Virus record (IMG/VR): IMGVR_UViG_3300021137_000001
Location: 248,001-312,000 of that record
Length of the DNA stretch: 64,000 nucleotides
Strand: one strand, 5' to 3'
In this document: in pieces, positions 55,498 through 64,000 of the stretch
Layout: every line of letters begins with the position of its first letter
Position numbering within the stretch: the stretch's first letter is position 1
Translations under genes and position numbers: made by a program
The notes under the pieces: model-generated
Told to the model about the DNA's origin: nothing
Database searches by the model: none
What the model saw: the letters and a program-made list of their open reading frames with translations, nothing else

Positions 55498-56699
55498 TAT
55501 AGGAATCCTCCATAACCCAAATCTTTATCTTGTAGCAATCTACCTGCAGCAAACGAGTCAAGATTGAATCTATCATGCAGATTTTTACGACTGTATACTG
55601 GTTTTAATGTAATCGATATTGTACTTGTTGCAGGAACACGAGTCGATGTTGTTACTGATTTATATGCTGTTTTTGTTTTGTTTGCAACACTCATAGGAGT
55701 TTCGGGTGTAACTAATGATTCTGTTAACGTTGCTGTAGTAACTGGAATTTCTATATAATCTACCTCGTTAGGCAAAGTATGCGAAAAGTTACTAATTACA
55801 CACGGAATATGTGGGAAATAATGACTACCGTATCCATCTAAGAATACAATTGGTGGTGGGTTACCTGCATTAGCACCTTGTCCAAAAAACATTTTAGTGG
55901 CCGATCTAAAAAAGTATATTGCAGCAAGCAAGTATTTGCCCTCATCAATACCTTGAACTGTAAATTCACCAGAAATAGTAATATCGCTTACTTCACTGTT
56001 ATTATAGAATTGTTGCGGATAGTTACTATGAGTTGGAGTTGCTGGAGTGTAGTTTGCTACATGCGAAGTAGTAATGCTTGGTGTATAAGGGAAAATTACA
56101 CCGTTAGTATCTTTAAGTGGTGCCATAAGACTATTTGGATTAGGGCCAGTTTCTTTATAAAATATAGTCGACAGATCAGCTAAACTTATGCGAACTCTCC
56201 AATCATCGGATGCACCGGAGCTATCTCCTCCGGTTTGAGTTTGAAATGCAACTTGTGGTGCTGTCTTGGCATCACTTGCAGCTCCGCCATCCTTAAGTCC
56301 TGAAATTGCTTTACGTGCATCTGTTGATTCGTATGAGCCTGCATCTTTTGATGGATCATATCCGCCGTTAACTGATTCTTCTTGTCCGGGAATATATCCA
56401 CCACGTGTATCATATGTTCCAGCTAATGCACTGCCAGTTGTATAATCCTGACTAATTGCAGCCTGGCCGCCAATTGAATCAGTTCCTGTTAAATATGCAC
56501 TCGGGTTACTTGCATTGTATCCGCCACCACTACTTAATGCTTGCGCACCGTTATATCCGCCGGCAAAACTTGGCGCATACGCACCGGTATAGTTTTGCGG
56601 AGCATAAGGGTCGTAGCCACCATTGGTAGAATCAACTTGTCCGGGCACGTAACCACCTCTATTATCAAATATAGGTGCGTCTGTAGGATTTAGAGCCAT
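55497..56699 (-). CDS. tail tube initiator / baseplate-tube protein (gp48/gp54-like) with GGY-rich N-terminal extension
   Basis: GVIFPYTP.I, HSNY....Y, PPIVFL.GYG, PCVI.NFS..LP..VDYI; position next to LysM gene. Confidence 0.6.
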   Translation of the reverse strand: MALNPTDAPIFDNRGGYVPGQVDSTNGGYDPYAPQNYTGAYAPSFAGGYNGAQALSSGGGYNASNPSAYLTGTDSIGGQAAISQDYTTGSALAGTYDTRGGYIPGQEESVNGGYDPSKDAGSYESTDARKAISGLKDGGAASDAKTAPQVAFQTQTGGDSSGASDDWRVRISLADLSTIFYKETGPNPNSLMAPLKDTNGVIFPYTPSITTSHVANYTPATPTHSNYPQQFYNNSEVSDITISGEFTVQGIDEGKYLLAAIYFFRSATKMFFGQGANAGNPPPIVFLDGYGSHYFPHIPCVISNFSHTLPNEVDYIEIPVTTATLTESLVTPETPMSVANKTKTAYKSVTTSTRVPATSTISITLKPVYSRKNLHDRFNLDSFAAGRLLQDKDLGYGGFL

Positions 56700-56720
56700 A
56701 GTAAAACCTCTGTTATAGTG

Positions 56721-56726
56721 TATTTA
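56721..56726 (-). promoter_or_regulatory. late promoter TAAATA heading the structural operon
   Basis: TAAATA-CAC-TATAAC-AGAGG upstream of ATG 56699. Confidence 0.7.
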
Positions 56727-56771
56727 TTGTCGGAGAAATAGTAGCAGTTAAAGAATAACCAGATAAATAGG

Positions 56772-56800
56772 TTGTATAGCGCAATACTATATGTTATAAT
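56772..56800 (+). promoter_or_regulatory. sigma70-type promoter with extended -10
   Basis: TTGTAT (56772-77), 17-bp spacer, TG-n-TATAAT (56795-800). Confidence 0.75.
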
Positions 56801-56821
56801 AATTAAAAGGAATCTATTCAC

Positions 56822-56857
56822 ATCATAATAAGTAAAGTAAATTACCTAAATAGATAA
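56822..56857 (+). pseudogene. remnant 5' end of the gp55-like gene (..ISKVNYLNR*)
   Basis: Encodes KVNYLN, matching RVNYLN at the start of 57561; follows an orphan AAGGA. Confidence 0.6.
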
Positions 56858-56879
56858 ATATATAAAAGGTAATATAAAT

Positions 56880-57557
56880 ATGACAACTTATTATGTATAT
56901 GCATATATTCGTAGCAAAACTTCGCTAACTGCTAGCATCGGCACCCCGTATTATATAGGTAAAGGAATAGGGCAACGTGCGTTTACTAAACATAATTGTC
57001 CAGTTCCGATAGATAAAACAAATATTTTGTTTATTAAAGAAAATTTAACAGAAATTGACGCACATTTATTAGAAATACAGCTCATAGAACAATATGGGAG
57101 AAAAGATTTAGGCAACGGAATATTACATAATCAAACGAATGGCGGAGAAGGCATAAGCAATCCATCTAGCACTACTAGAGAAAAAATGGCGGCTGCTAAA
57201 AGAAATGAATCCGCTGATACTAGATTAAAACGATCAATTGCAGCAAAGAATAGAATCCGCACACCACTTAGCGATGAAACAAAACGTAAGATTAGCGAGG
57301 CTAATACAGGTAAAAAAAGAACAGACGATGCTAAATTAAAGCAGTCGGTTGCTAAGAAAGGTAGAACGTGGGAAGATATTTTTGGTATCGAAGAGGCAGC
57401 TAGAAGAAGGGATATACTTGCAAGTGACGAAGTTAAGTTAAAAATGAGTATAGCTGCGTGTAACAGAAGTGACGAAGGTGCCGCCAATATAGCTGAAGCA
57501 AATAGGAAAATTGGTATATTAAGAAAAGAAGCAAATAACAAATTAAAGGGTGTATAA
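56880..57557 (+). CDS. GIY-YIG homing endonuclease with NUMOD3-like repeats
   Basis: YYVYAY...PYYIGKG..R, E..LI..YGRKD, N.TNGGEG; SDETKRKIS repeats. Confidence 0.88.
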   Translation: MTTYYVYAYIRSKTSLTASIGTPYYIGKGIGQRAFTKHNCPVPIDKTNILFIKENLTEIDAHLLEIQLIEQYGRKDLGNGILHNQTNGGEGISNPSSTTREKMAAAKRNESADTRLKRSIAAKNRIRTPLSDETKRKISEANTGKKRTDDAKLKQSVAKKGRTWEDIFGIEEAARRRDILASDEVKLKMSIAACNRSDEGAANIAEANRKIGILRKEANNKLKGV

Positions 57558-57560
57558 TAT

Positions 57561-58460
57561 ATGGCAAGACGTGTGAACTATTTGAATAATAAAGACATTT
57601 TAAAAGAAATCGCTAAAAGTAAATTAACATATTGTAGTTTCATTAATAAAGATGTAACTATGTACGATGCTATTGTATTAAACGTAAGTGCAATTACTAA
57701 AAAATCCGTAGCAGAAGCCAGAGCAACAAGAGCAACAAGGCTTGCTAAAGAAGCACAAGAAGCTGAATTATTGCTCGGTAACAAACGCAAGTTAGATGAA
57801 TTTGCAATCCCAGTAGAAAATATCCCAGTAACAGACATTGTATTCCGTGTTATGACATGGGAACATATACCAATCGACGAAGTTAAACAGAAAAAATCCG
57901 ACGCTAAAGCACAAGAAGCGTACGACGAAGATTTGTTCGAAACTGAATACGATGAGCCTGCACCAGTTGTTAAAGTCAAAGGTGCTGTTAAGTACGTTAA
58001 ACTAAACTTTCCTCCTTTCTTTCATTATTCAGTAACCGAAGACTTAACTCCAATTGTTGTTGGTAAGAGTCACTGGAAAGGCGACTTTGAAACTGGCGGT
58101 TTTGTTAAAGATCATGGTAGCATGACGGCTAAGTTAGCTCATATGTTTGTTAAACTATGTGAACGCTATGCTACACGTAGTAACTGGCGTGGTTATACAT
58201 ACAATGACGAGATGCGTAGCCAAGCATTACTTCAATTAAGTCAAATTGGGCTACAGTTTGACGAAAGTAAATCAGACAATCCATTTGCTTATTATACAGC
58301 CGCAATTACAAACAGCTTTACTCGTGTATTAAACATCGAAAAGCGCAATCAAAATATTCGTGATGACATTTTAGAGATGAACAACTACGCACCAAGCTAT
58401 ACTCGACAGAATCAAGGCGGTAACTGGGGCGGTGGTGGTGGACACGGAGCCGACGAATAA
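57561..58460 (+). CDS. 55: late-transcription sigma factor, T4 gp55-like
   Basis: VNYLNNKD.L, NWRGYTY.DEM, FDESKSDNPFAYYT...NSF.R....EK; synteny with gp47/gp46. Confidence 0.9.
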   Translation: MARRVNYLNNKDILKEIAKSKLTYCSFINKDVTMYDAIVLNVSAITKKSVAEARATRATRLAKEAQEAELLLGNKRKLDEFAIPVENIPVTDIVFRVMTWEHIPIDEVKQKKSDAKAQEAYDEDLFETEYDEPAPVVKVKGAVKYVKLNFPPFFHYSVTEDLTPIVVGKSHWKGDFETGGFVKDHGSMTAKLAHMFVKLCERYATRSNWRGYTYNDEMRSQALLQLSQIGLQFDESKSDNPFAYYTAAITNSFTRVLNIEKRNQNIRDDILEMNNYAPSYTRQNQGGNWGGGGGHGADE

Positions 58461-58473
58461 CCGCAAATTATTT

Positions 58474-58525
58474 TATCTGCCAGTCGCCCATAACTAAATA
58501 CATTTACAGGGGATTGGCAGATATG
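58474..58525 (+). promoter_or_regulatory. late promoter inside SD/ATG-sequestering hairpin
   Basis: TATCTGCCAGTC-g-CCC pairs with GGG-GATTGGCAGATA; TAAATA at 58495-500 in the loop; ATG at 58523. Confidence 0.8.
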
Positions 58526-59185
58526 AAATACAAAAAAGATTACTATGGTTATGTATATGAATGGATAAATTCCACTAATAATATGAAATATATCGGATCG
58601 CATTACGGAGCAGTCGATGATTATTATAAAGGATCCGGCAAAGATTTTATGGTAGCATATAAAAATAACCCACAACACTTTACTATGAGAGTATTAGAAT
58701 ATGTTTCTGAAAACAATAAAAAATTAGTATTAGAAACAGAAAAAAAATGGCTTGATACAGTAGTAAATATTAAAGATGATCCAACATATTATAATCTCAA
58801 TAATGATGCGACAGGCGGATTTGGGTATTTAGATGAATCTCATATCGTTAAACGAGCAGAAACATTAAAGAAGAAACACGCTATCCACGGATTAAGTACC
58901 GAAGAAATACAATCATATAAGCAAAAAATACAAACCAGACTCGATAGAATAGCAACTACTGGGTTTACCGATAAAGAAAAAGAACAACATGCAAAATACG
59001 GAATTAAATTACAAGTCACCTTACCCTCAGGAGAAGTACGAATATATAATTCCATCGGGGCTGCCGAACGTGAGTTAAAACTTAACATTAAGTATGGATT
59101 AAAAATATGTGCCAAAAAACTTGACTTCAAAGGGTACATTCTAGTAAAATTAAATGAACCACTAATCGATTGTAGGAAAAAATGA
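58523..59185 (+). CDS. GIY-YIG (Seg-like) homing endonuclease
   Basis: GYVYEW.N..N.MKYIGSH, Y.GSG, E..WL, YYNLNN.A.GG; start moved to ATG 58523. Confidence 0.85.
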   Translation: MKYKKDYYGYVYEWINSTNNMKYIGSHYGAVDDYYKGSGKDFMVAYKNNPQHFTMRVLEYVSENNKKLVLETEKKWLDTVVNIKDDPTYYNLNNDATGGFGYLDESHIVKRAETLKKKHAIHGLSTEEIQSYKQKIQTRLDRIATTGFTDKEKEQHAKYGIKLQVTLPSGEVRIYNSIGAAERELKLNIKYGLKICAKKLDFKGYILVKLNEPLIDCRKK

Positions 59186-60195
59186 ATTTATTCAAAAAAG
59201 CTGCGGTATTTACAGATTTACATCTAGGACTAAAGTCAAATAGTACACAACATAATGAAGATTGCCTTGCGTACATTAAATGGTTTATTAGTAATGCAAA
59301 AAAAGAAGGGTGCGATGTTTGCTTTTTTCTTGGAGACTATCATAATAATCGAGCGGCAATTAATGTAGTCACGTTAAACTATAGCCTAACAGCGTTAGAG
59401 TTGTTGGGCAAAGCGTTTGACCGTGTTATCTTTATTCCGGGCAATCATGATTTATATTATCGTGACAAGCGTGATATACAATCTGCACAATGGGCAAAGC
59501 ATATTCCAAACATTGAGATTATTAATGATTTCTATCAAGAGGGTGATGTAAGCATTGTTCCGTGGCTAGTAGGAGATGATCATAAAAAGATACAAAAGAT
59601 CAATGCAAAGTATATGTTCGGGCACTTTGAGTTACCGGGCTATTATATGAATGCAATGGTGCAAATGCCAGAGCACGGTGAGATTAGACGTGAGGATTTT
59701 GGGCATATTGATCATGTGTACAGTGGGCATTTTCATAAACGTCAAACAGGTAAGAATATTACATATATTGGCAATGCGTTTCCACATAATTATGCAGATG
59801 CAGGTGATGATGAACGTGGTATGATGATACTTAACTGGGGAGAAGAGCCAACGTTTCATGCATGGCCTGATCAACCCAAGTATCGTGTATACACACTAAG
59901 CGACATTTTGCAAACTCCAGATACGTTGTTACAAAAAGGTATGCACTGTCGAGTAAACATCGACGTGGATATTTCATATGAAGAAGCAACATTTATTAAA
60001 GAAACTTTTGTAGGTACATATAATTTGCGTGAGCTTACATTAATTCCAGTAAAGCACACTGATATCGGCACAGATATTATGCTAGGCAATATTCAATTCG
60101 AAAGTATTGATACAATCGTGACAAGTCAACTAACAGCTATCAACAGTGAGCATTATAATCCAGCATTGTTATTAGACATCTATAGGAATTTATAA
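59182..60195 (+). CDS. 47: recombination endonuclease subunit, gp47/Mre11/SbcD-like
   Basis: DLH, GD, GNHD, GHFE, GHFH metallophosphoesterase motifs. Confidence 0.93.
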   Translation: MNLFKKAAVFTDLHLGLKSNSTQHNEDCLAYIKWFISNAKKEGCDVCFFLGDYHNNRAAINVVTLNYSLTALELLGKAFDRVIFIPGNHDLYYRDKRDIQSAQWAKHIPNIEIINDFYQEGDVSIVPWLVGDDHKKIQKINAKYMFGHFELPGYYMNAMVQMPEHGEIRREDFGHIDHVYSGHFHKRQTGKNITYIGNAFPHNYADAGDDERGMMILNWGEEPTFHAWPDQPKYRVYTLSDILQTPDTLLQKGMHCRVNIDVDISYEEATFIKETFVGTYNLRELTLIPVKHTDIGTDIMLGNIQFESIDTIVTSQLTAINSEHYNPALLLDIYRNL

Positions 60196-60231
60196 TTGTT
60201 TAAAATAAAAAATCTTACAGTTAACAGGTAA
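60196..60231 (+). pseudogene. remnant 5' end of gp46 (TTG-FKIKNLTVNR*)
   Basis: Matches MAFRIKNLTV at 60851; 14-bp exact repeat at 60205-18 and 60863-76; AGGAA 7 nt upstream. Confidence 0.7.
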
Positions 60232-60234
60232 ATG

Positions 60235-60242
60235 TATAAATA
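60235..60242 (+). promoter_or_regulatory. T4-consensus late promoter TATAAATA
   Basis: Exact consensus upstream of AGGAG and ATG 60261. Confidence 0.75.
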
Positions 60243-60260
60243 GTTATATAGGAGTAATAT

Positions 60261-60851
60261 ATGGCTAAAAGAAGAATATTTACAGAGGACGAATTGAATT
60301 TAATCATTGATTTACAACGGTCGGTTACTGAGATATGCTTACTAGTTAGTGCATCACATCCAACAATAACTAAGATCAGAAAAGAGGTAGGTATCGTTAC
60401 TATTAGAGGTAGGAGAGGTGGGTCTGTTGTTCCGTCTCAACGAAGAACTATTTACTGTGTATGCCAGAATGCGGCGTGTAAAAAAGAATTCGAATCAATA
60501 AAATCAACTCCTCGTAAATTTTGTAGCCACACGTGCCAACAACGAGCTGCAAATGTTGCTGCAAAAGGAATCGGTTCAAGAAAAATGCGTAACCCTAACA
60601 CTCCTGTATATAAAAAATATGCTAGAATAGTACATGGGATGAGTCATAAGATATATTTGTCAAACATAGCTATTATTAACCCTAATGGATATGTTAGAAC
60701 ATTATGCGGAGTTAAAGATGGATGGCAATTAGATCATATCATTCCTATTAAGGAATGTTTTGAAAGAAATATACCCCCAGAAGAGGCAGCTAGTATTAAT
60801 AATCTTAGGATGCTTCCATGGAAAGATAATTTAATGAGACAATATAAATAA
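60261..60851 (+). CDS. HNH homing endonuclease with N-terminal HTH-like and Cys-rich DNA-binding region
   Basis: C....C..EF......KFCS..CQ; C-terminal LDHIIP........NNL..L....N. Confidence 0.8.
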   Translation: MAKRRIFTEDELNLIIDLQRSVTEICLLVSASHPTITKIRKEVGIVTIRGRRGGSVVPSQRRTIYCVCQNAACKKEFESIKSTPRKFCSHTCQQRAANVAAKGIGSRKMRNPNTPVYKKYARIVHGMSHKIYLSNIAIINPNGYVRTLCGVKDGWQLDHIIPIKECFERNIPPEEAASINNLRMLPWKDNLMRQYK

Positions 60852-62623
60852 TGGCATTCCGTATAAAAAATCTTACCGTGAAAAATTTCATGAGTGTTGG
60901 TAATGCAACGCAAGCAGTGGACTTTGATCGCAATGATCTCACGTTAGTGCTTGGTGTCAATGTTGATTTAGGTGGTGACGACAGCGGCGCACGTAACGGC
61001 ACTGGTAAAACAACTATCATCAATGCGTTAAGCTACAGTTTGTTTGGGCAAGCGTTGACTAATATTAAACGTGATAACTTAATTAATAAAACTAATGGTA
61101 AGAACATGTTAGTCACAGTTGAGTTCGAACATAACGGGCAAGATTATAAGATTGAGCGTGGACGTAAGCCAAACGTAATGAAGTTTTACGTGGGTGATGA
61201 AGAAAAAGAAATTACAGACGAATCGCAAGGTGATAGCAGAGAAACGCAAGCTGAGATTGAGCGTATGTTAAGCATGAAGCATGATATGTTTAAACACATT
61301 GTTGCTCTTAACACGTACACTGAACCGTTCCTTAGTTTAAAGTCGGGTGATCAACGTGAGATCATCGAGCAGCTACTCGGTATTACTATGCTTAGTGAAA
61401 AGGCTGAGAATTTAAAAGAGTTGACTCGTGCTACAAAGGATGCAATTCAGCAAGAAGAATACAGTATTAAGGCGATTGCAGACGCAAACGGACGCATAAA
61501 AGAACAAATTGAGAGCTTAATTCGTCGACAAAATATGTGGACTACTAAGCACACAGATGATGCAGCAAAGTTAGAAAATGCGTTAGCAGAGTTGCATAAA
61601 ATTGATATTGAACAAGAACTTGCAGCACACACTGCGCTTACTGCATATAATCAACAGCGCAAAGACTTAGATGATTTGGGTAAAGCTATATTGCGTGGTG
61701 AGGCAGATATTGCTCGCGAACAAAAAACTATAGACAAAGTTACTAAAGAAATTGCCGATTTAGAAGCGCACACTTGCTATGCTTGCGGGCAACATTTTCA
61801 TGATGATAAACATGAGTCGGTATTAGCGGCTAAACGTGTTTCACTTGAAACCGCAACAAATCAATATTTGTCAGATCAATCACAGTTGCTTGCACTTACT
61901 GGTGCTAAGGCAGAAATTGGTGCCCTTGGTGCACAACCTCGAGTATATTATGATAAAGAAGCAGATGCATTCCATCATAAAGGTTCAATTACTAGTTTAG
62001 AAACACAGTTAGCAACTAAGAGTGCGGAAGTTGACCCATATGCTGAACAGATTGAAGAAATGACGCATACTGCTATGGCAGAAACTGATTTTACTACAAT
62101 GAATGAGCTCGTTAAGTTAAAGGAACATCAAGACTTCTTGTTAAAACTATTAACTAACAAAGATAGCTTTATCCGTAAGCGTATTATTGATCAGAACTTG
62201 TCGCATCTAAACGCAAGATTAAGTCAATACTTAGATCGCATCGGATTGCCACACACAGTAACGTTCTTAAATGATTTAAGCGTTGAAATTACAGAGCTTG
62301 GGCGCGAGTTAGACTTTGATAATTTATCACGTGGTGAACGTAATCGCTTGATCTTAAGTTTAAGCTGGGCGTTCCGTGATGTGTGGGAGAGTTTATACAA
62401 TCCGATTAACTTATTGTTTATTGATGAGCTTATTGATAGTGGCATGGACAGTAGCGGAGTTGAAAGTTCACTAGGCATACTTAAAAAGATGTCGCGTGAA
62501 CATGAGAAAAGTATTTGGCTTGTTTCGCACAAAGACGAACTTGCGGGTCGTGTAAACAATATCATGACTGTAACAAAAGAGAATGGGTTTACTACATACA
62601 GCACCGACGTTGAAGTAATTTAA
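60851..62623 (+). CDS. 46: recombination ATPase subunit, gp46/Rad50/SbcC-like
   Basis: NGTGKTT, coiled coil with CYAC zinc hook, LSRGE, LFIDE, SHK. Confidence 0.95.
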   Translation: MAFRIKNLTVKNFMSVGNATQAVDFDRNDLTLVLGVNVDLGGDDSGARNGTGKTTIINALSYSLFGQALTNIKRDNLINKTNGKNMLVTVEFEHNGQDYKIERGRKPNVMKFYVGDEEKEITDESQGDSRETQAEIERMLSMKHDMFKHIVALNTYTEPFLSLKSGDQREIIEQLLGITMLSEKAENLKELTRATKDAIQQEEYSIKAIADANGRIKEQIESLIRRQNMWTTKHTDDAAKLENALAELHKIDIEQELAAHTALTAYNQQRKDLDDLGKAILRGEADIAREQKTIDKVTKEIADLEAHTCYACGQHFHDDKHESVLAAKRVSLETATNQYLSDQSQLLALTGAKAEIGALGAQPRVYYDKEADAFHHKGSITSLETQLATKSAEVDPYAEQIEEMTHTAMAETDFTTMNELVKLKEHQDFLLKLLTNKDSFIRKRIIDQNLSHLNARLSQYLDRIGLPHTVTFLNDLSVEITELGRELDFDNLSRGERNRLILSLSWAFRDVWESLYNPINLLFIDELIDSGMDSSGVESSLGILKKMSREHEKSIWLVSHKDELAGRVNNIMTVTKENGFTTYSTDVEVI

Positions 62624-62647
62624 TTTTACCATCCACTACAGGGTGGT

Positions 62648-62661
62648 TAAATACATATAAC
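62648..62661 (+). promoter_or_regulatory. late promoter TAAATA-CA-TATAAC
   Basis: Upstream of AAGGAG and ATG 62679; preceded by small hairpin 62628-47. Confidence 0.65.
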
Positions 62662-62678
62662 AACAAGGAGAAGTAAAC

Positions 62679-62864
62679 ATGGCAATTCATGATGATATTT
62701 TAGCAGCAGTAGAATTATACGTTTCAGAATCAGAAAAATTTGAAGTTAAAGGTGTTAAAGCTGCAGCGGCACGTGCTCGCGGTGCATTAGGCGATTTAGG
62801 TAAGTTAACTAAAGCTCGTCGTGCAGAAATTCAAACCAAAAAGAACGAACTGTCCGCTAAGTAA
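62679..62864 (+). CDS. histone H1-like Hc1-family small basic protein
   Basis: KG.KAAAARAR.AL..L.KL.K.RR.EIQ..K pattern. Confidence 0.7.
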   Translation: MAIHDDILAAVELYVSESEKFEVKGVKAAAARARGALGDLGKLTKARRAEIQTKKNELSAK

Positions 62865-62873
62865 TAACGGAAA

Positions 62874-62958
62874 ATGCTGACATTTTGAATAAATAGTAGT
62901 GTAGTTCGCGGGTGTAGGAACCCCAACTACTCTAACATTGTAAAGGAATGTCAGCATG
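62874..62958 (+). promoter_or_regulatory. structured leader: 11-bp outer stem, late promoter and inner hairpin
   Basis: ATGCTGACATT (62874-84) is the reverse complement of AATGTCAGCAT (62947-57); TAAATA 62890-95; GTAGTT..GGGT/ACCC..AACTAC 62901-30. Confidence 0.8.
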
Positions 62959-63534
62959 AATATTTATTACGTATACCAGTACCTTAGAGAAAAGGATTCG
63001 TCTACTGCTCTAGCAGGTACACCATACTATATAGGAAAAGGTAAGAACAACCGAGCATATATAGGACACAATAATAGAATACCTTCAAATAAAGAATATA
63101 TTCAAATTATTAAAGATAATTTAACTGAACAAGAAGCAATGGACCTTGAAATTATGCTAATTAAAAAATATGGTCGTAAAGATTTAGTAACAGGTATTTT
63201 AATAAATCTTTCAAACGGCGGCGAAGGAGCAAGCGGATCTGTTCGTTCGCAAGAGCACAAGACACGTATATCTCAAGCACAAACAGGAAAAATTGTTTCA
63301 GATTCAACAAGAGAAAAATTAAGTAAGGCATTATCAGGTAAAAAACGATCAGATATTGCTAAGTTTAATATTAGCAAAGCACACATAGGTCAAGTTCCTT
63401 GGAATAAAAACATACAAATGACAGAAGAGTGGAAGGCAAAACGCCCTTGGCATAGTTGTGATATTTGTGGTATTCAATCCCAAAACCTTACTAATATTAA
63501 AAGATTTCACAATAGCAATTGTAAAAATAAATAG
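62956..63534 (+). CDS. GIY-YIG homing endonuclease with NUMOD3-like repeats (same subfamily as 56880)
   Basis: YYVYQY...PYYIGKG..R, KYGRKD...GIL.N.SNGGEG; C-terminal CDIC..HNSNC. Confidence 0.88.
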   Translation: MNIYYVYQYLREKDSSTALAGTPYYIGKGKNNRAYIGHNNRIPSNKEYIQIIKDNLTEQEAMDLEIMLIKKYGRKDLVTGILINLSNGGEGASGSVRSQEHKTRISQAQTGKIVSDSTREKLSKALSGKKRSDIAKFNISKAHIGQVPWNKNIQMTEEWKAKRPWHSCDICGIQSQNLTNIKRFHNSNCKNK

Positions 63535-63538
63535 CATT

Positions 63539-63991
63539 ATGGCATATGATAATCCCTGGATCTATAATGGTACAACTTTTGATTCAGGGGATATCGGTGA
63601 ATACTACGGCTTCATTTATAGAATAACTAATATCACTAACGGACACGATTATGTGGGCCGCAAATATTTTAAAACTATTAAAAAAAGACCACCACTAAAA
63701 GGTAAGAAGAACAAACGTTTAGAAACAATTGAAACTGATTGGAAAGACTATTGGGGTTCATCAAATCGTTTAGTAGCAGATATACTAGCACTAGGTAAAG
63801 AACAGTTTACCCGTGAAATTATACATTTATGTAAAAGTCGCGGTGAAACTAACTATATGGAAGCGCATTATCAATTTAAAGAAGAAGTACTGTTAAGGGA
63901 AGATAACTATAATGGTATTATACAACTTAAACTAGGTAAAAACTCCGTTAAAGATGTAAAAATTAATAAATCAGTTGACCAACGACACTAA
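63539..63991 (+). CDS. stand-alone GIY-YIG catalytic-domain protein (Seg-like, no DNA-binding tail)
   Basis: GFIYRITN....YVGRK, DWKDYWGSS, F.REII.LC, Y.E...QF...VL, YN; start moved to ATG 63539. Confidence 0.8.
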   Translation: MAYDNPWIYNGTTFDSGDIGEYYGFIYRITNITNGHDYVGRKYFKTIKKRPPLKGKKNKRLETIETDWKDYWGSSNRLVADILALGKEQFTREIIHLCKSRGETNYMEAHYQFKEEVLLREDNYNGIIQLKLGKNSVKDVKINKSVDQRH

Positions 63992-64000
63992 ACGTAATAC

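What the first reader, a model, noticed from the sequence alone, without database searches (positions are those of the whole stretch)
58474..58525. Late-only translation switch for the Seg-like HEG
Seen: a ~15-bp stem (one G-U pair, one bulge) buries SD GGGGA and the A of ATG, with TAAATA in the loop. Known: T4 I-TevI, e and soc are silenced on early read-through transcripts by RBS hairpins and translated from a late promoter that omits the 5' arm. Inference: the HEG is silent on gp55-gp47 polycistronic mRNA and turns on late.
Basis: partly seen in the sequence, partly recalled or inferred. Interest (0 to 1): 0.65.

Follow-up and report, generated by a model that had tools for sequence, protein, structure and literature searches.

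The report
Late-only RBS hairpin on a homing endonuclease
A selfish endonuclease gene in an uncultured giant phage hides its ribosome-binding site in an RNA hairpin whose loop holds a late promoter, the same trick phage T4 uses, so it is a well-supported but ordinary new example.

Summary
A 15-bp stem (58474-58489 with 58509-58523) has one G-U pair and one bulged G. It buries the SD GGGGA and the A of the ATG, and TAAATA sits in the 19-nt loop. MFE is -23.2 kcal/mol, z = -4.85.

The window comes from a complete 329-kb metagenomic jumbo phage that carries a T4 gp55-type late sigma factor. In this genome NTAAATA is the late-promoter box, lying 18-24 nt before the start codons of structural genes. 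The CTAAATA variant found here is used elsewhere at the same spacing. By T4 geometry the late start is A58506. That leaves out the 5' arm and opens the RBS (unpaired probability 0.15 rising to 0.75).

gp55 upstream has a conserved sigma70-type promoter, and no terminator lies before the hairpin.

Homologues of this Seg-like GIY-YIG gene give 25 distinct upstream sequences. Wherever the flanks could be checked, the gene sits between gp55 and gp47. All 25 keep TAAATA in the loop, and 21 keep a strong arm-RBS duplex. Relatives with an empty site, or with non-endonuclease cargo at that site, lack both features.

No transcript data could be obtained, and formal covariation is not significant.

This is a new member of the known T4 I-TevI / segB / mobE design.

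The parts
56772..56800 (+). Putative sigma70-type (early) promoter: TTGTAT, 17-nt spacer, TGn-extended TATAAT. It lies upstream of HEG1 and gp55.
   Evidence: Read. The same block sits directly before gp55 in relatives that lack HEG1. More distant relatives have a clear TTGACA-N17-TAGTAT there.
56880..57557 (+). HEG1, a GIY-YIG/NUMOD3 homing-endonuclease-like ORF. It has a weaker copy of the same design: arms 56841-56847 and 56867-56873, late box 56853-56860.
   Evidence: Pfam NUMOD3 and PHROG 314. 7-bp duplex of -7.8 kcal/mol, z = -2.4.
57561..58460 (+). gp55-type late sigma factor (299 aa). Its mRNA must be made before the late phase.
   Evidence: phrog_12791, E = 4e-79. tblastn finds jumbo-phage late sigma factors at 39-44% identity.
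58474..58489 (+). 5' arm of the hairpin. It is present only on transcripts that start upstream.
58493..58500 (+). Late-promoter box ACTAAATA in the loop, equivalent to T4 TATAAATA at -13 to -6.
   Evidence: CTAAATA lies 15-26 nt before gene starts at 8 of 58 sites, against 0.44 expected. TAAATA is invariant in all 25 homologue sequences.
58506..58506 (+). Predicted late transcription start (+1), 3 nt before the 3' arm.
   Evidence: Inferred from T4 geometry, where the first T of the box is at -13 (PMC2988020). Not mapped.
58509..58523 (+). 3' arm. It contains the SD GGGGA (58509-58513) and the A of the ATG.
   Evidence: From 58506 onward the RBS is unpaired. Unpaired probability is 0.15 on the long RNA and 0.75 on the late RNA.
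58523..59185 (+). Seg-like GIY-YIG homing endonuclease gene (220 aa). Its stop overlaps the gp47 ATG.
   Evidence: PF19835 in all 9 family members scanned, NUMOD-like domains in 4-5 of them. PHROG 314. Present or absent at this site among relatives.
59121..59150 (+). Sigma70-like promoter (TTGACT, 18-nt spacer, TAAAAT) embedded in the 3' coding end of the endonuclease gene, 31 nt before gp47.
   Evidence: It is recognisable in the 11 HEG2 homologues compared (TTGACT in nine, TTGATT in two; one has GTAAAGT), although synonymous codons were available; L103 lacks it. Empty sites carry a promoter-like TTGAC...TAtACT directly before gp47.
59182..60195 (+). gp47 (Mre11/SbcD-like nuclease), the downstream host gene.
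   Evidence: Metallophos and phrog_100.
62876..62955 (+). Second strong instance of the design, before the HEG at 62956-63534: 5' arm 62876-62884, late box 62889-62895, 3' arm 62947-62955.
   Evidence: MFE -34.7 kcal/mol. Duplex -17.8 kcal/mol, z = -5.0. Five antisense paralogues with the same leader lack the arm.

Best explanation
The hairpin is the translational half of a self-contained regulatory cassette that travels with a free-standing GIY-YIG homing endonuclease gene inserted between gp55 and gp47. Transcripts that start upstream carry both arms. These include the sigma70-type promoter that expresses the late sigma factor gp55, and any other upstream promoter. On them the SD and AUG are locked in a stem of about -23 kcal/mol, so the endonuclease is not translated. 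Once gp55 is made, RNA polymerase starts at the ACTAAATA box in the loop, at about A58506. That RNA lacks the 5' arm, begins 3 nt before the SD, and is translated. What is shown: the structure and its rarity, the status of the promoter motif in this genome, the geometry, the conservation, and the link to endonuclease genes. What is inferred: the start site, the early read-through, and late-only translation.
For: Structure.

Promoter: ATAAATA is the most enriched 7-mer upstream of genes (13-fold) and peaks sharply 18-24 nt before the ATG. It precedes baseplate and virion genes. The CTAAATA variant is enriched at the same spacing (8 observed against 0.44 expected, p = 2e-8). The box here lies 22 nt before the ATG.

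T4 geometry puts +1 six nt after the box (PMC2988020).

Upstream transcription: a sigma70-type promoter before gp55 is conserved across the clade. There is no terminator-like site on the + strand in 56500-64000.

Conservation: homologues were found in 23 viral-contig and 29 metagenome loci. All those checked for flanks have gp55 and/or gp47 on the expected side, as far as the contig reaches. They give 25 distinct upstream sequences at 52-100% aa identity. All have TAAATA 18-28 nt before the ATG, with the predicted +1 between the arms. 21 of 25 have an arm-RBS duplex of -14 kcal/mol or stronger and z of -3.2 or lower. L125/L126 carry a C-G to A-U double change. L129 has an 11-bp stem in its own register in which four pairs differ on both sides from the window.

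Specificity: relatives with an empty site have neither the arms nor the box. Among 86 distinct ORFs in the gp55-gp47-gp46 gaps of 80 related loci, all 7 HEG-like ORFs have TAAATA 18-24 nt upstream, against 1 of 79 others (p = 1.5e-9).

Paralogue control: of six HEG paralogues that share one leader, only the one co-oriented with its upstream genes has a 5' arm.

Precedent: the same layout is established for I-TevI, II and III, T4 segB and Aeh1 mobE (PMC2988022).
Against: There is no RNA evidence.

The box differs from this genome's main form (ATAAATA) and from the T4 consensus at two positions.

Formal covariation on MAFFT and covariance-model alignments is no better than shuffles, because the arms are nearly invariant in sequence.

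Four of 25 homologues have only a weak stem, so the device can be lost.

The minus strand folds almost as well (-21.7 kcal/mol, z = -3.1), so strand specificity rests mainly on wobble pairs seen in homologues.

The host and its ribosome are unknown.
Confidence: 0.72

Rival explanations
1. The hairpin is a constitutive translational attenuator. It keeps endonuclease synthesis low at all times, and the TAAATA in the loop is not an active promoter.
For: The hairpin is real. The box is a non-consensus variant. No TSS data exist.
Against: TAAATA is invariant in 25 homologue sequences while its loop flanks vary, and its distance to the 3' arm is held at 6-8 nt in most. CTAAATA is enriched at promoter spacing genome-wide. 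All 7 HEG-like ORFs in this gene cluster in relatives carry the box, against 1 of 79 other ORFs.
Confidence: 0.12
2. The inverted repeat acts at the DNA level. It would be an operator for a dimeric regulator or for the endonuclease itself (autorepression of its late promoter, as for I-TevI), or part of the endonuclease's recognition site.
For: The repeat brackets the promoter. The arms are conserved in sequence rather than covarying. The minus strand folds nearly as well. I-TevI has an operator over its late promoter (PMC2988022).
Against: There is no significant similarity between this region and the empty gp55/gp47 junctions that would be the homing site. G-U and U-G pairs occur at several stem positions in homologues and only pair on the + strand RNA. 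L129 keeps complementarity with different arm sequences. The 3' arm always coincides with the SD and AUG.
Confidence: 0.07
3. The stem-loop belongs to gp55. It would be a 3' stabiliser, an RNase processing site or a weak terminator for the gp55 message, and its overlap with the endonuclease RBS is incidental.
For: It starts 13 nt after the gp55 stop codon. One relative (L012) has a terminator-like hairpin after gp55.
Against: No U-tract follows the stem, and the terminator scan finds nothing on this strand. Relatives with 92-93% identical gp55 but no endonuclease gene lack the hairpin. The hairpin is found only together with the HEG.
Confidence: 0.06

Closest known systems
T4 I-TevI (td intron) late-promoter / RBS-hairpin switch, and the same layout in I-TevII and I-TevIII
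   Same: A stable hairpin sequesters the SD. A gp55-type late promoter immediately upstream starts a transcript too short to form it. The gene is embedded in an early/middle transcription unit (PMC2988022).
   Different: Here the gene is free-standing, not inside an intron, so the splicing rationale proposed for I-TevI does not apply. The phage is a distant 329-kb jumbo phage whose gp55 is only 39-44% identical to its nearest sequenced relatives. The box is ACTAAATA. No operator-like similarity to the homing site was found.
T4 segB and Aeromonas phage Aeh1 mobE (free-standing endonucleases with RBS hairpins)
   Same: A free-standing HEG sits between conserved genes, with its RBS sequestered and a late promoter placed so that late RNA lacks the inhibitory arm (PMC2988022). 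Promoters for the downstream host gene embedded in the HEG coding region are also known in T4 (segG, segA, segE, mobB, mobC).
   Different: The insertion site is different (gp55/gp47), as is the phage lineage. Here there is comparative evidence from 25 natural variants, but no experiment.
T4 late genes e, soc, 39, 25 and 26, whose RBS hairpins form on early read-through transcripts
   Same: The same logic: a late gene lies on long early/middle polycistronic RNA and is unmasked by a proximal late start (PMC2988022).
   Different: Those are phage genes, not selfish elements. In this genome the two strongest cases are both HEGs.

Membership tests
T4-type late-promoter-bypassed RBS hairpin (I-TevI / segB / mobE design) | A stable RNA stem that includes the SD and/or the start codon | tested here: met
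   15-bp stem, -23.2 kcal/mol, z = -4.85. SD 58509-58513 and A58523 are paired.
T4-type late-promoter-bypassed RBS hairpin (I-TevI / segB / mobE design) | A gp55-type late promoter placed so that the late transcript lacks the 5' arm | tested here: met
   Met at sequence level only. The ACTAAATA box is at 58493-58500, the genome uses NTAAATA at this spacing, and the predicted +1 at 58506 lies between the arms.
T4-type late-promoter-bypassed RBS hairpin (I-TevI / segB / mobE design) | A mapped late 5' end inside or after the loop | not testable with these tools
T4-type late-promoter-bypassed RBS hairpin (I-TevI / segB / mobE design) | The gene lies on read-through transcripts from an earlier promoter class | tested here: inconclusive
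   A sigma70-type promoter upstream of gp55 is conserved, and there is no terminator-like site before the hairpin. Transcripts themselves were not observed.
T4-type late-promoter-bypassed RBS hairpin (I-TevI / segB / mobE design) | Translation is repressed on long RNA and permitted on short RNA | not testable with these tools
   Only computed accessibility is available: 0.15 against 0.75.
Free-standing GIY-YIG (Seg-like) homing endonuclease | A GIY-YIG catalytic domain plus a NUMOD-type DNA-binding region | tested here: met
   PF19835 hits in 9 of 9 family members (the window protein scores 26 bits against a cut-off of 25). I-HmuI NUMOD-like hits in 5 and NUMOD1 in 4. PHROG 314, E = 4e-15. A profile search against PDB sequences found nothing.
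Free-standing GIY-YIG (Seg-like) homing endonuclease | Presence/absence polymorphism at one site between conserved genes | tested here: met
   Relatives with 92-93% identical gp55 have a gap of about 60 nt there (L003, L005, L008). 23 viral-contig loci carry the gene next to gp55 and/or gp47 at that site.
Free-standing GIY-YIG (Seg-like) homing endonuclease | Site-specific cleavage of the allele that lacks the endonuclease gene | not testable with these tools
   Needs purified protein and an empty-site substrate.
Intrinsic (rho-independent) terminator | A GC-rich stem followed by a U-tract | tested here: not met
   The stem is followed by AUGAAAUAC. The scan reports no terminator on the + strand.

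The most novel reading that the evidence does not exclude
The hairpin is only one of three late-only designs that homing endonuclease genes use in this phage lineage. The second appears undescribed. Nine of the 32 HEG-like genes carry ATAAATA 4-5 nt (eight of them exactly 5 nt) before an ATG and have no SD. By T4 geometry the transcript would then start at the A of the AUG. Such a gene would be translated only as a leaderless late mRNA and would be silent on read-through RNA without needing any hairpin. The third design is an antisense orientation with the gene's own late promoter and a conserved structured leader.
Probability: 0.35. Interest if true: 0.6.

Novelty: new member of a known kind. 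Interest (0 to 1): 0.4.

Why it matters
It shows that the T4 solution for keeping a selfish endonuclease silent until late also operates in a deeply divergent, uncultured freshwater jumbo-phage clade. That solution is an RBS hairpin bypassed by a late promoter. Here it behaves as a portable cassette made of the 5' arm, the late box, the RBS, the ORF and a replacement promoter for the downstream gene. The cassette has been kept across 52-100% protein divergence. This supports the view that late-restricted expression is a general requirement for homing endonucleases that live inside early replication and recombination operons. It also gives a sequence signature for annotating late promoters and HEG cassettes in metagenomic phages. 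It does not reveal a new mechanism.

Tried and rejected
I did not try another route.
- Near-identical phage records: none found. tblastn of the HEG against phage records gave only partial, distant hits.
- Covariation: counts on the MAFFT alignments and on a covariance-model alignment were no better than shuffles. The model alignment also picked up minus-strand matches and did not re-register L129, so I report compensatory changes only by inspection.
- I-TevI-style operator idea (promoter region resembling the homing site): local alignments to empty junctions were not significant, with 97 to 682 of 1000 shuffles scoring as well. Rejected.
- HEGs as a class do not have stronger arm-RBS duplexes than other late-box genes (Mann-Whitney p = 0.32). 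Only a few HEGs carry the strong device.
- A profile search against PDB sequences gave no meaningful hit.
- The large protein searches, structure prediction and complex prediction were not needed and were not run.
- No alternative genetic code was used.

Full report
**What is in the sequence**

The region after the gp55-like gene (stop codon at 58458-58460) contains an inverted repeat, 58474-58489 paired with 58509-58523. It gives 15 pairs, with one G-U pair (58483/58514) and one bulged G (58486). The 19-nt loop holds TAAATA at 58495-58500. The 3' arm contains the SD GGGGA (58509-58513) and the first base of the ATG at 58523.

RNAfold gives -23.2 kcal/mol for 58461-58545, and none of 200 dinucleotide shuffles is as stable (z = -4.85). 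The MFE adds six weak pairs that also cover the rest of the start codon. An RNA beginning at 58506 has no structure over the RBS.

**Context**

The window is bases 248001-312000 of a single 329,321-bp contig. It has direct terminal repeats and is estimated to be 100% complete. It is a JGI metagenome contig, and no phage record matches it closely.

The genes around the hairpin, in order, are:
- HEG1, a GIY-YIG/NUMOD3 endonuclease-like ORF (56880-57557)
- a 299-aa gp55-type late sigma factor (57561-58460; phrog_12791, E = 4e-79)
- the 220-aa SegE-type GIY-YIG ORF (58523-59185)
- gp47 (59182-60195)
- an HNH-like ORF (60261-60851)
- gp46 (60851-62623)

The nearest sequenced late sigma factors, from Sinorhizobium phage Phosso and the PA5oct and RaK2 groups, are only 39-44% identical. 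The genome carries about 32 HEG-like ORFs.

**Is TAAATA a late promoter here?**

- ATAAATA is the most enriched 7-mer within 80 nt upstream of called genes (13-fold).
- The gap between the motif and the ATG peaks sharply at 18-24 nt.
- The motif precedes a baseplate wedge gene, virion structural genes and others on the structural strand.
- ATAAATA lies 15-26 nt before a start at 31 of 126 sites, against 0.95 expected. The CTAAATA variant found in this loop does so at 8 of 58 sites, against 0.44 expected (p = 2e-8).
- The box here ends 22 nt before the ATG.

In T4 the 8-bp box begins at -13 (PMC2988020), so its last A is at -6. That predicts +1 at A58506, which is 3 nt before the 3' arm and 17 nt after the end of the 5' arm. 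The computed unpaired probability of the SD-to-AUG stretch is 0.15 on RNA that starts upstream and 0.75 on RNA that starts at the predicted +1.

**Does pre-late transcription enter the hairpin?**

The late sigma factor must itself be made from a promoter that is not late. A sigma70-type promoter lies at 56772-56800 (TTGTAT, 17-nt spacer, TGn-TATAAT). In relatives that lack HEG1 the same block sits directly in front of gp55. In more distant relatives it is a clear TTGACA-N17-TAGTAT.

No terminator-like site exists on the + strand between there and the end of the window, and the hairpin is not followed by a U-tract. Read-through is therefore a well-grounded inference, but it was not observed.

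**Comparative evidence**

The gp55-gp47-gp46 order is conserved in 80 IMG/VR loci, with gp47 at 61-100% identity. The gp55-gp47 gap is either about 60-100 nt or 0.7-2.4 kb.

Homologues of the endonuclease were found in 23 viral-contig and 29 metagenome loci. In the loci checked for flanks, gp55 and/or gp47 lie on the expected side as far as the contig reaches. Their divergence tracks that of gp47 (Spearman 0.89), which suggests long residence at this site.

These loci yield 25 distinct upstream sequences:
- All have TAAATA 18-28 nt before the ATG, with the predicted start between the arms.
- 21 have an arm-RBS duplex of -14 to -28 kcal/mol (z from -3.2 to -8.1).
- Four are weak.
- TAAATA and the core of both arms are nearly invariant, while the loop flanks vary.

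Because the arms barely vary, formal covariation is not significant. On the two alignments, 81.7% and 79% of cells pair, against 31-47% when the partner column is slid, but shuffles match the observed scores. A covariance-model alignment did not change this.

By inspection, L125 and L126 carry a C-G to A-U double change. L129, the most divergent homologue (52% aa identity), forms an 11-bp stem in its own register, and four of its pairs differ on both sides from the window. G-U and U-G pairs at several positions pair only on the + strand RNA. The window's own minus strand nevertheless folds almost as well.

**Specificity to endonuclease genes**

- Relatives with 92-93% identical gp55 but an empty site diverge from the window immediately after the gp55 stop codon and have neither arms nor box. 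Instead they carry a promoter-like element directly before gp47.
- Other cargo at the same site consists of radical-SAM/SPASM and DUF6071 proteins. These start at an ATG overlapping the end of gp55, with no box and no hairpin.
- Among 86 distinct ORFs in the two gaps of the cluster, all 7 HEG-like ORFs have TAAATA 18-24 nt upstream, against 1 of 79 others (p = 1.5e-9).
- One of the seven, L010:1142, is a different HEG-like ORF at the same site. It has its own hairpin of -21.6 kcal/mol, with TATAAATA at the top.

Within this genome, the two strongest duplexes between the region upstream of the box and the RBS, out of 88 late-box genes, are this gene and the HEG at 62956. The 62956 HEG belongs to a set of six paralogues with a shared leader. 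The five copies that lie antisense to their neighbours lack any 5' arm (duplexes of -3.6 to -7.4 kcal/mol, z above -0.8). The one co-oriented copy has it (-17.8 kcal/mol, z = -5.0; whole structure -34.7 kcal/mol). This is what one expects if the arm exists to silence read-through RNA.

**Mechanism and comparison with known systems**

Long RNA from upstream promoters is translationally silent for the endonuclease, and RNA started by gp55-RNAP inside the loop is translatable.

This is the design established for I-TevI, I-TevII, I-TevIII, T4 segB and Aeh1 mobE. It is also known for the T4 genes e, soc, 39, 25 and 26 (PMC2988022).

One refinement concerns gp47. The 3' coding end of the endonuclease gene contains TTGACT-N18-TAAAAT at 59121-59150. 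This element is recognisable in the 11 HEG2 homologues compared although synonymous codons were available, with TTGATT in two and one changed base in the -10 of one; L103 lacks it. gp47 therefore probably has its own early promoter supplied by the cassette. Embedded promoters of this kind are also known for T4 seg and mob genes.

**Rivals**

- Constitutive attenuator: argued against by the invariance, spacing and genome-wide status of the box.
- DNA-level operator: no similarity to the empty junction, and wobble pairs favour an RNA structure.
- A gp55 3' element or terminator: no U-tract, and the hairpin is absent wherever the HEG is absent.

**Verdict**

It is a new member of a known kind, and interest is moderate to low. 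The limits are the lack of any transcript data, the non-consensus box, and the weak formal covariation.

The most interesting lead lies outside the finding: a class of predicted leaderless late mRNAs that is strongly enriched in HEGs.

Noticed in passing
Genome-wide. In the window: ATG at 63539 (+), 49824 (-) and 33335 (-).: Twenty genes have NTAAATA 3-7 nt before the ATG, 16 of them at exactly 5 nt. The 16 at N5 have T at -1, and none has an SD. By T4 geometry the transcript would start at the A of the AUG, giving a leaderless late mRNA. Nine of the 20 are HEG-like (odds ratio 13, p = 3e-6). For the gene at 63539, the 4-5 nt spacing is kept in most of 80 related loci while the intervening bases vary. 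No paper in the held library links leaderless mRNAs to homing endonucleases.
   Followed up: partly
window 62876-63534: A second, even more stable promoter-in-loop hairpin (-34.7 kcal/mol) precedes a GIY-YIG/NUMOD3 HEG. Its five paralogues share the leader but lie antisense to their neighbours, and they lack the 5' arm.
   Followed up: yes
whole genome (G000): There are about 32 homing-endonuclease-like ORFs (29 GIY-YIG/NUMOD and 3 HNH-like) among about 414 called genes. Many are single genes lying antisense within + strand blocks.
   Followed up: partly
window 59121-59150: A sigma70-like promoter is embedded in the 3' coding end of the endonuclease gene and is recognisable in 11 of its 12 compared homologues. 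It apparently replaces the promoter that sits directly before gp47 in empty-site relatives.
   Followed up: partly
Genome 58378, 158298, 236832, 239338, 245821 (all - strand) and window 62889-62955: Six HEG paralogues share a conserved leader of about 60 nt. It starts at a GATAAATA box and contains its own conserved stem-loop (AGTGTAGTT paired with AACTACTCT). The function of this inner hairpin is unknown.
   Followed up: no
window 63539-63991: This 150-aa protein has a strong SegE-type GIY-YIG domain (E = 1e-36). It is conserved at 76-100% identity in 120 related contigs, which fits a core or domesticated gene better than a mobile one. Its C-terminal part gives the genome's only hit to the gp33 late-coactivator family PF16805, and that hit is below the cut-off.
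   Followed up: partly
L006, L013, L021, L051 (radical SAM/SPASM); L025, L049 (DUF6071); all at the gp55/gp47 junction: In relatives the same junction holds non-HEG cargo. In most, the ATG overlaps the last codons of gp55, which suggests translational coupling to the sigma factor gene. None has a late box or a hairpin.
   Followed up: partly
window 56801-56880 compared with L003, L005 and L008 upstream of gp55: HEG1 appears to have been inserted between gp55's promoter and SD block and the gp55 start codon. It has a 7-bp version of the same device, with arms 56841-56847 and 56867-56873 and the box 56853-56860 in the loop.
   Followed up: partly
L010:1067-1141: A different HEG-like ORF (257 aa, no Pfam hit, phmmer E = 1e-6 to this genome's HEGs) sits at the same gp55/gp47 site. 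It has its own hairpin of -21.6 kcal/mol with a consensus TATAAATA at its top. This looks like independent use of the same design.
   Followed up: partly
L083-L085 compared with L003 and L004: Relatives that carry the HEG have gp47 98% identical to the window. Relatives without it have 93%. gp55 is 93% identical in both groups. This fits co-conversion of the gp47 flank during homing.
   Followed up: no
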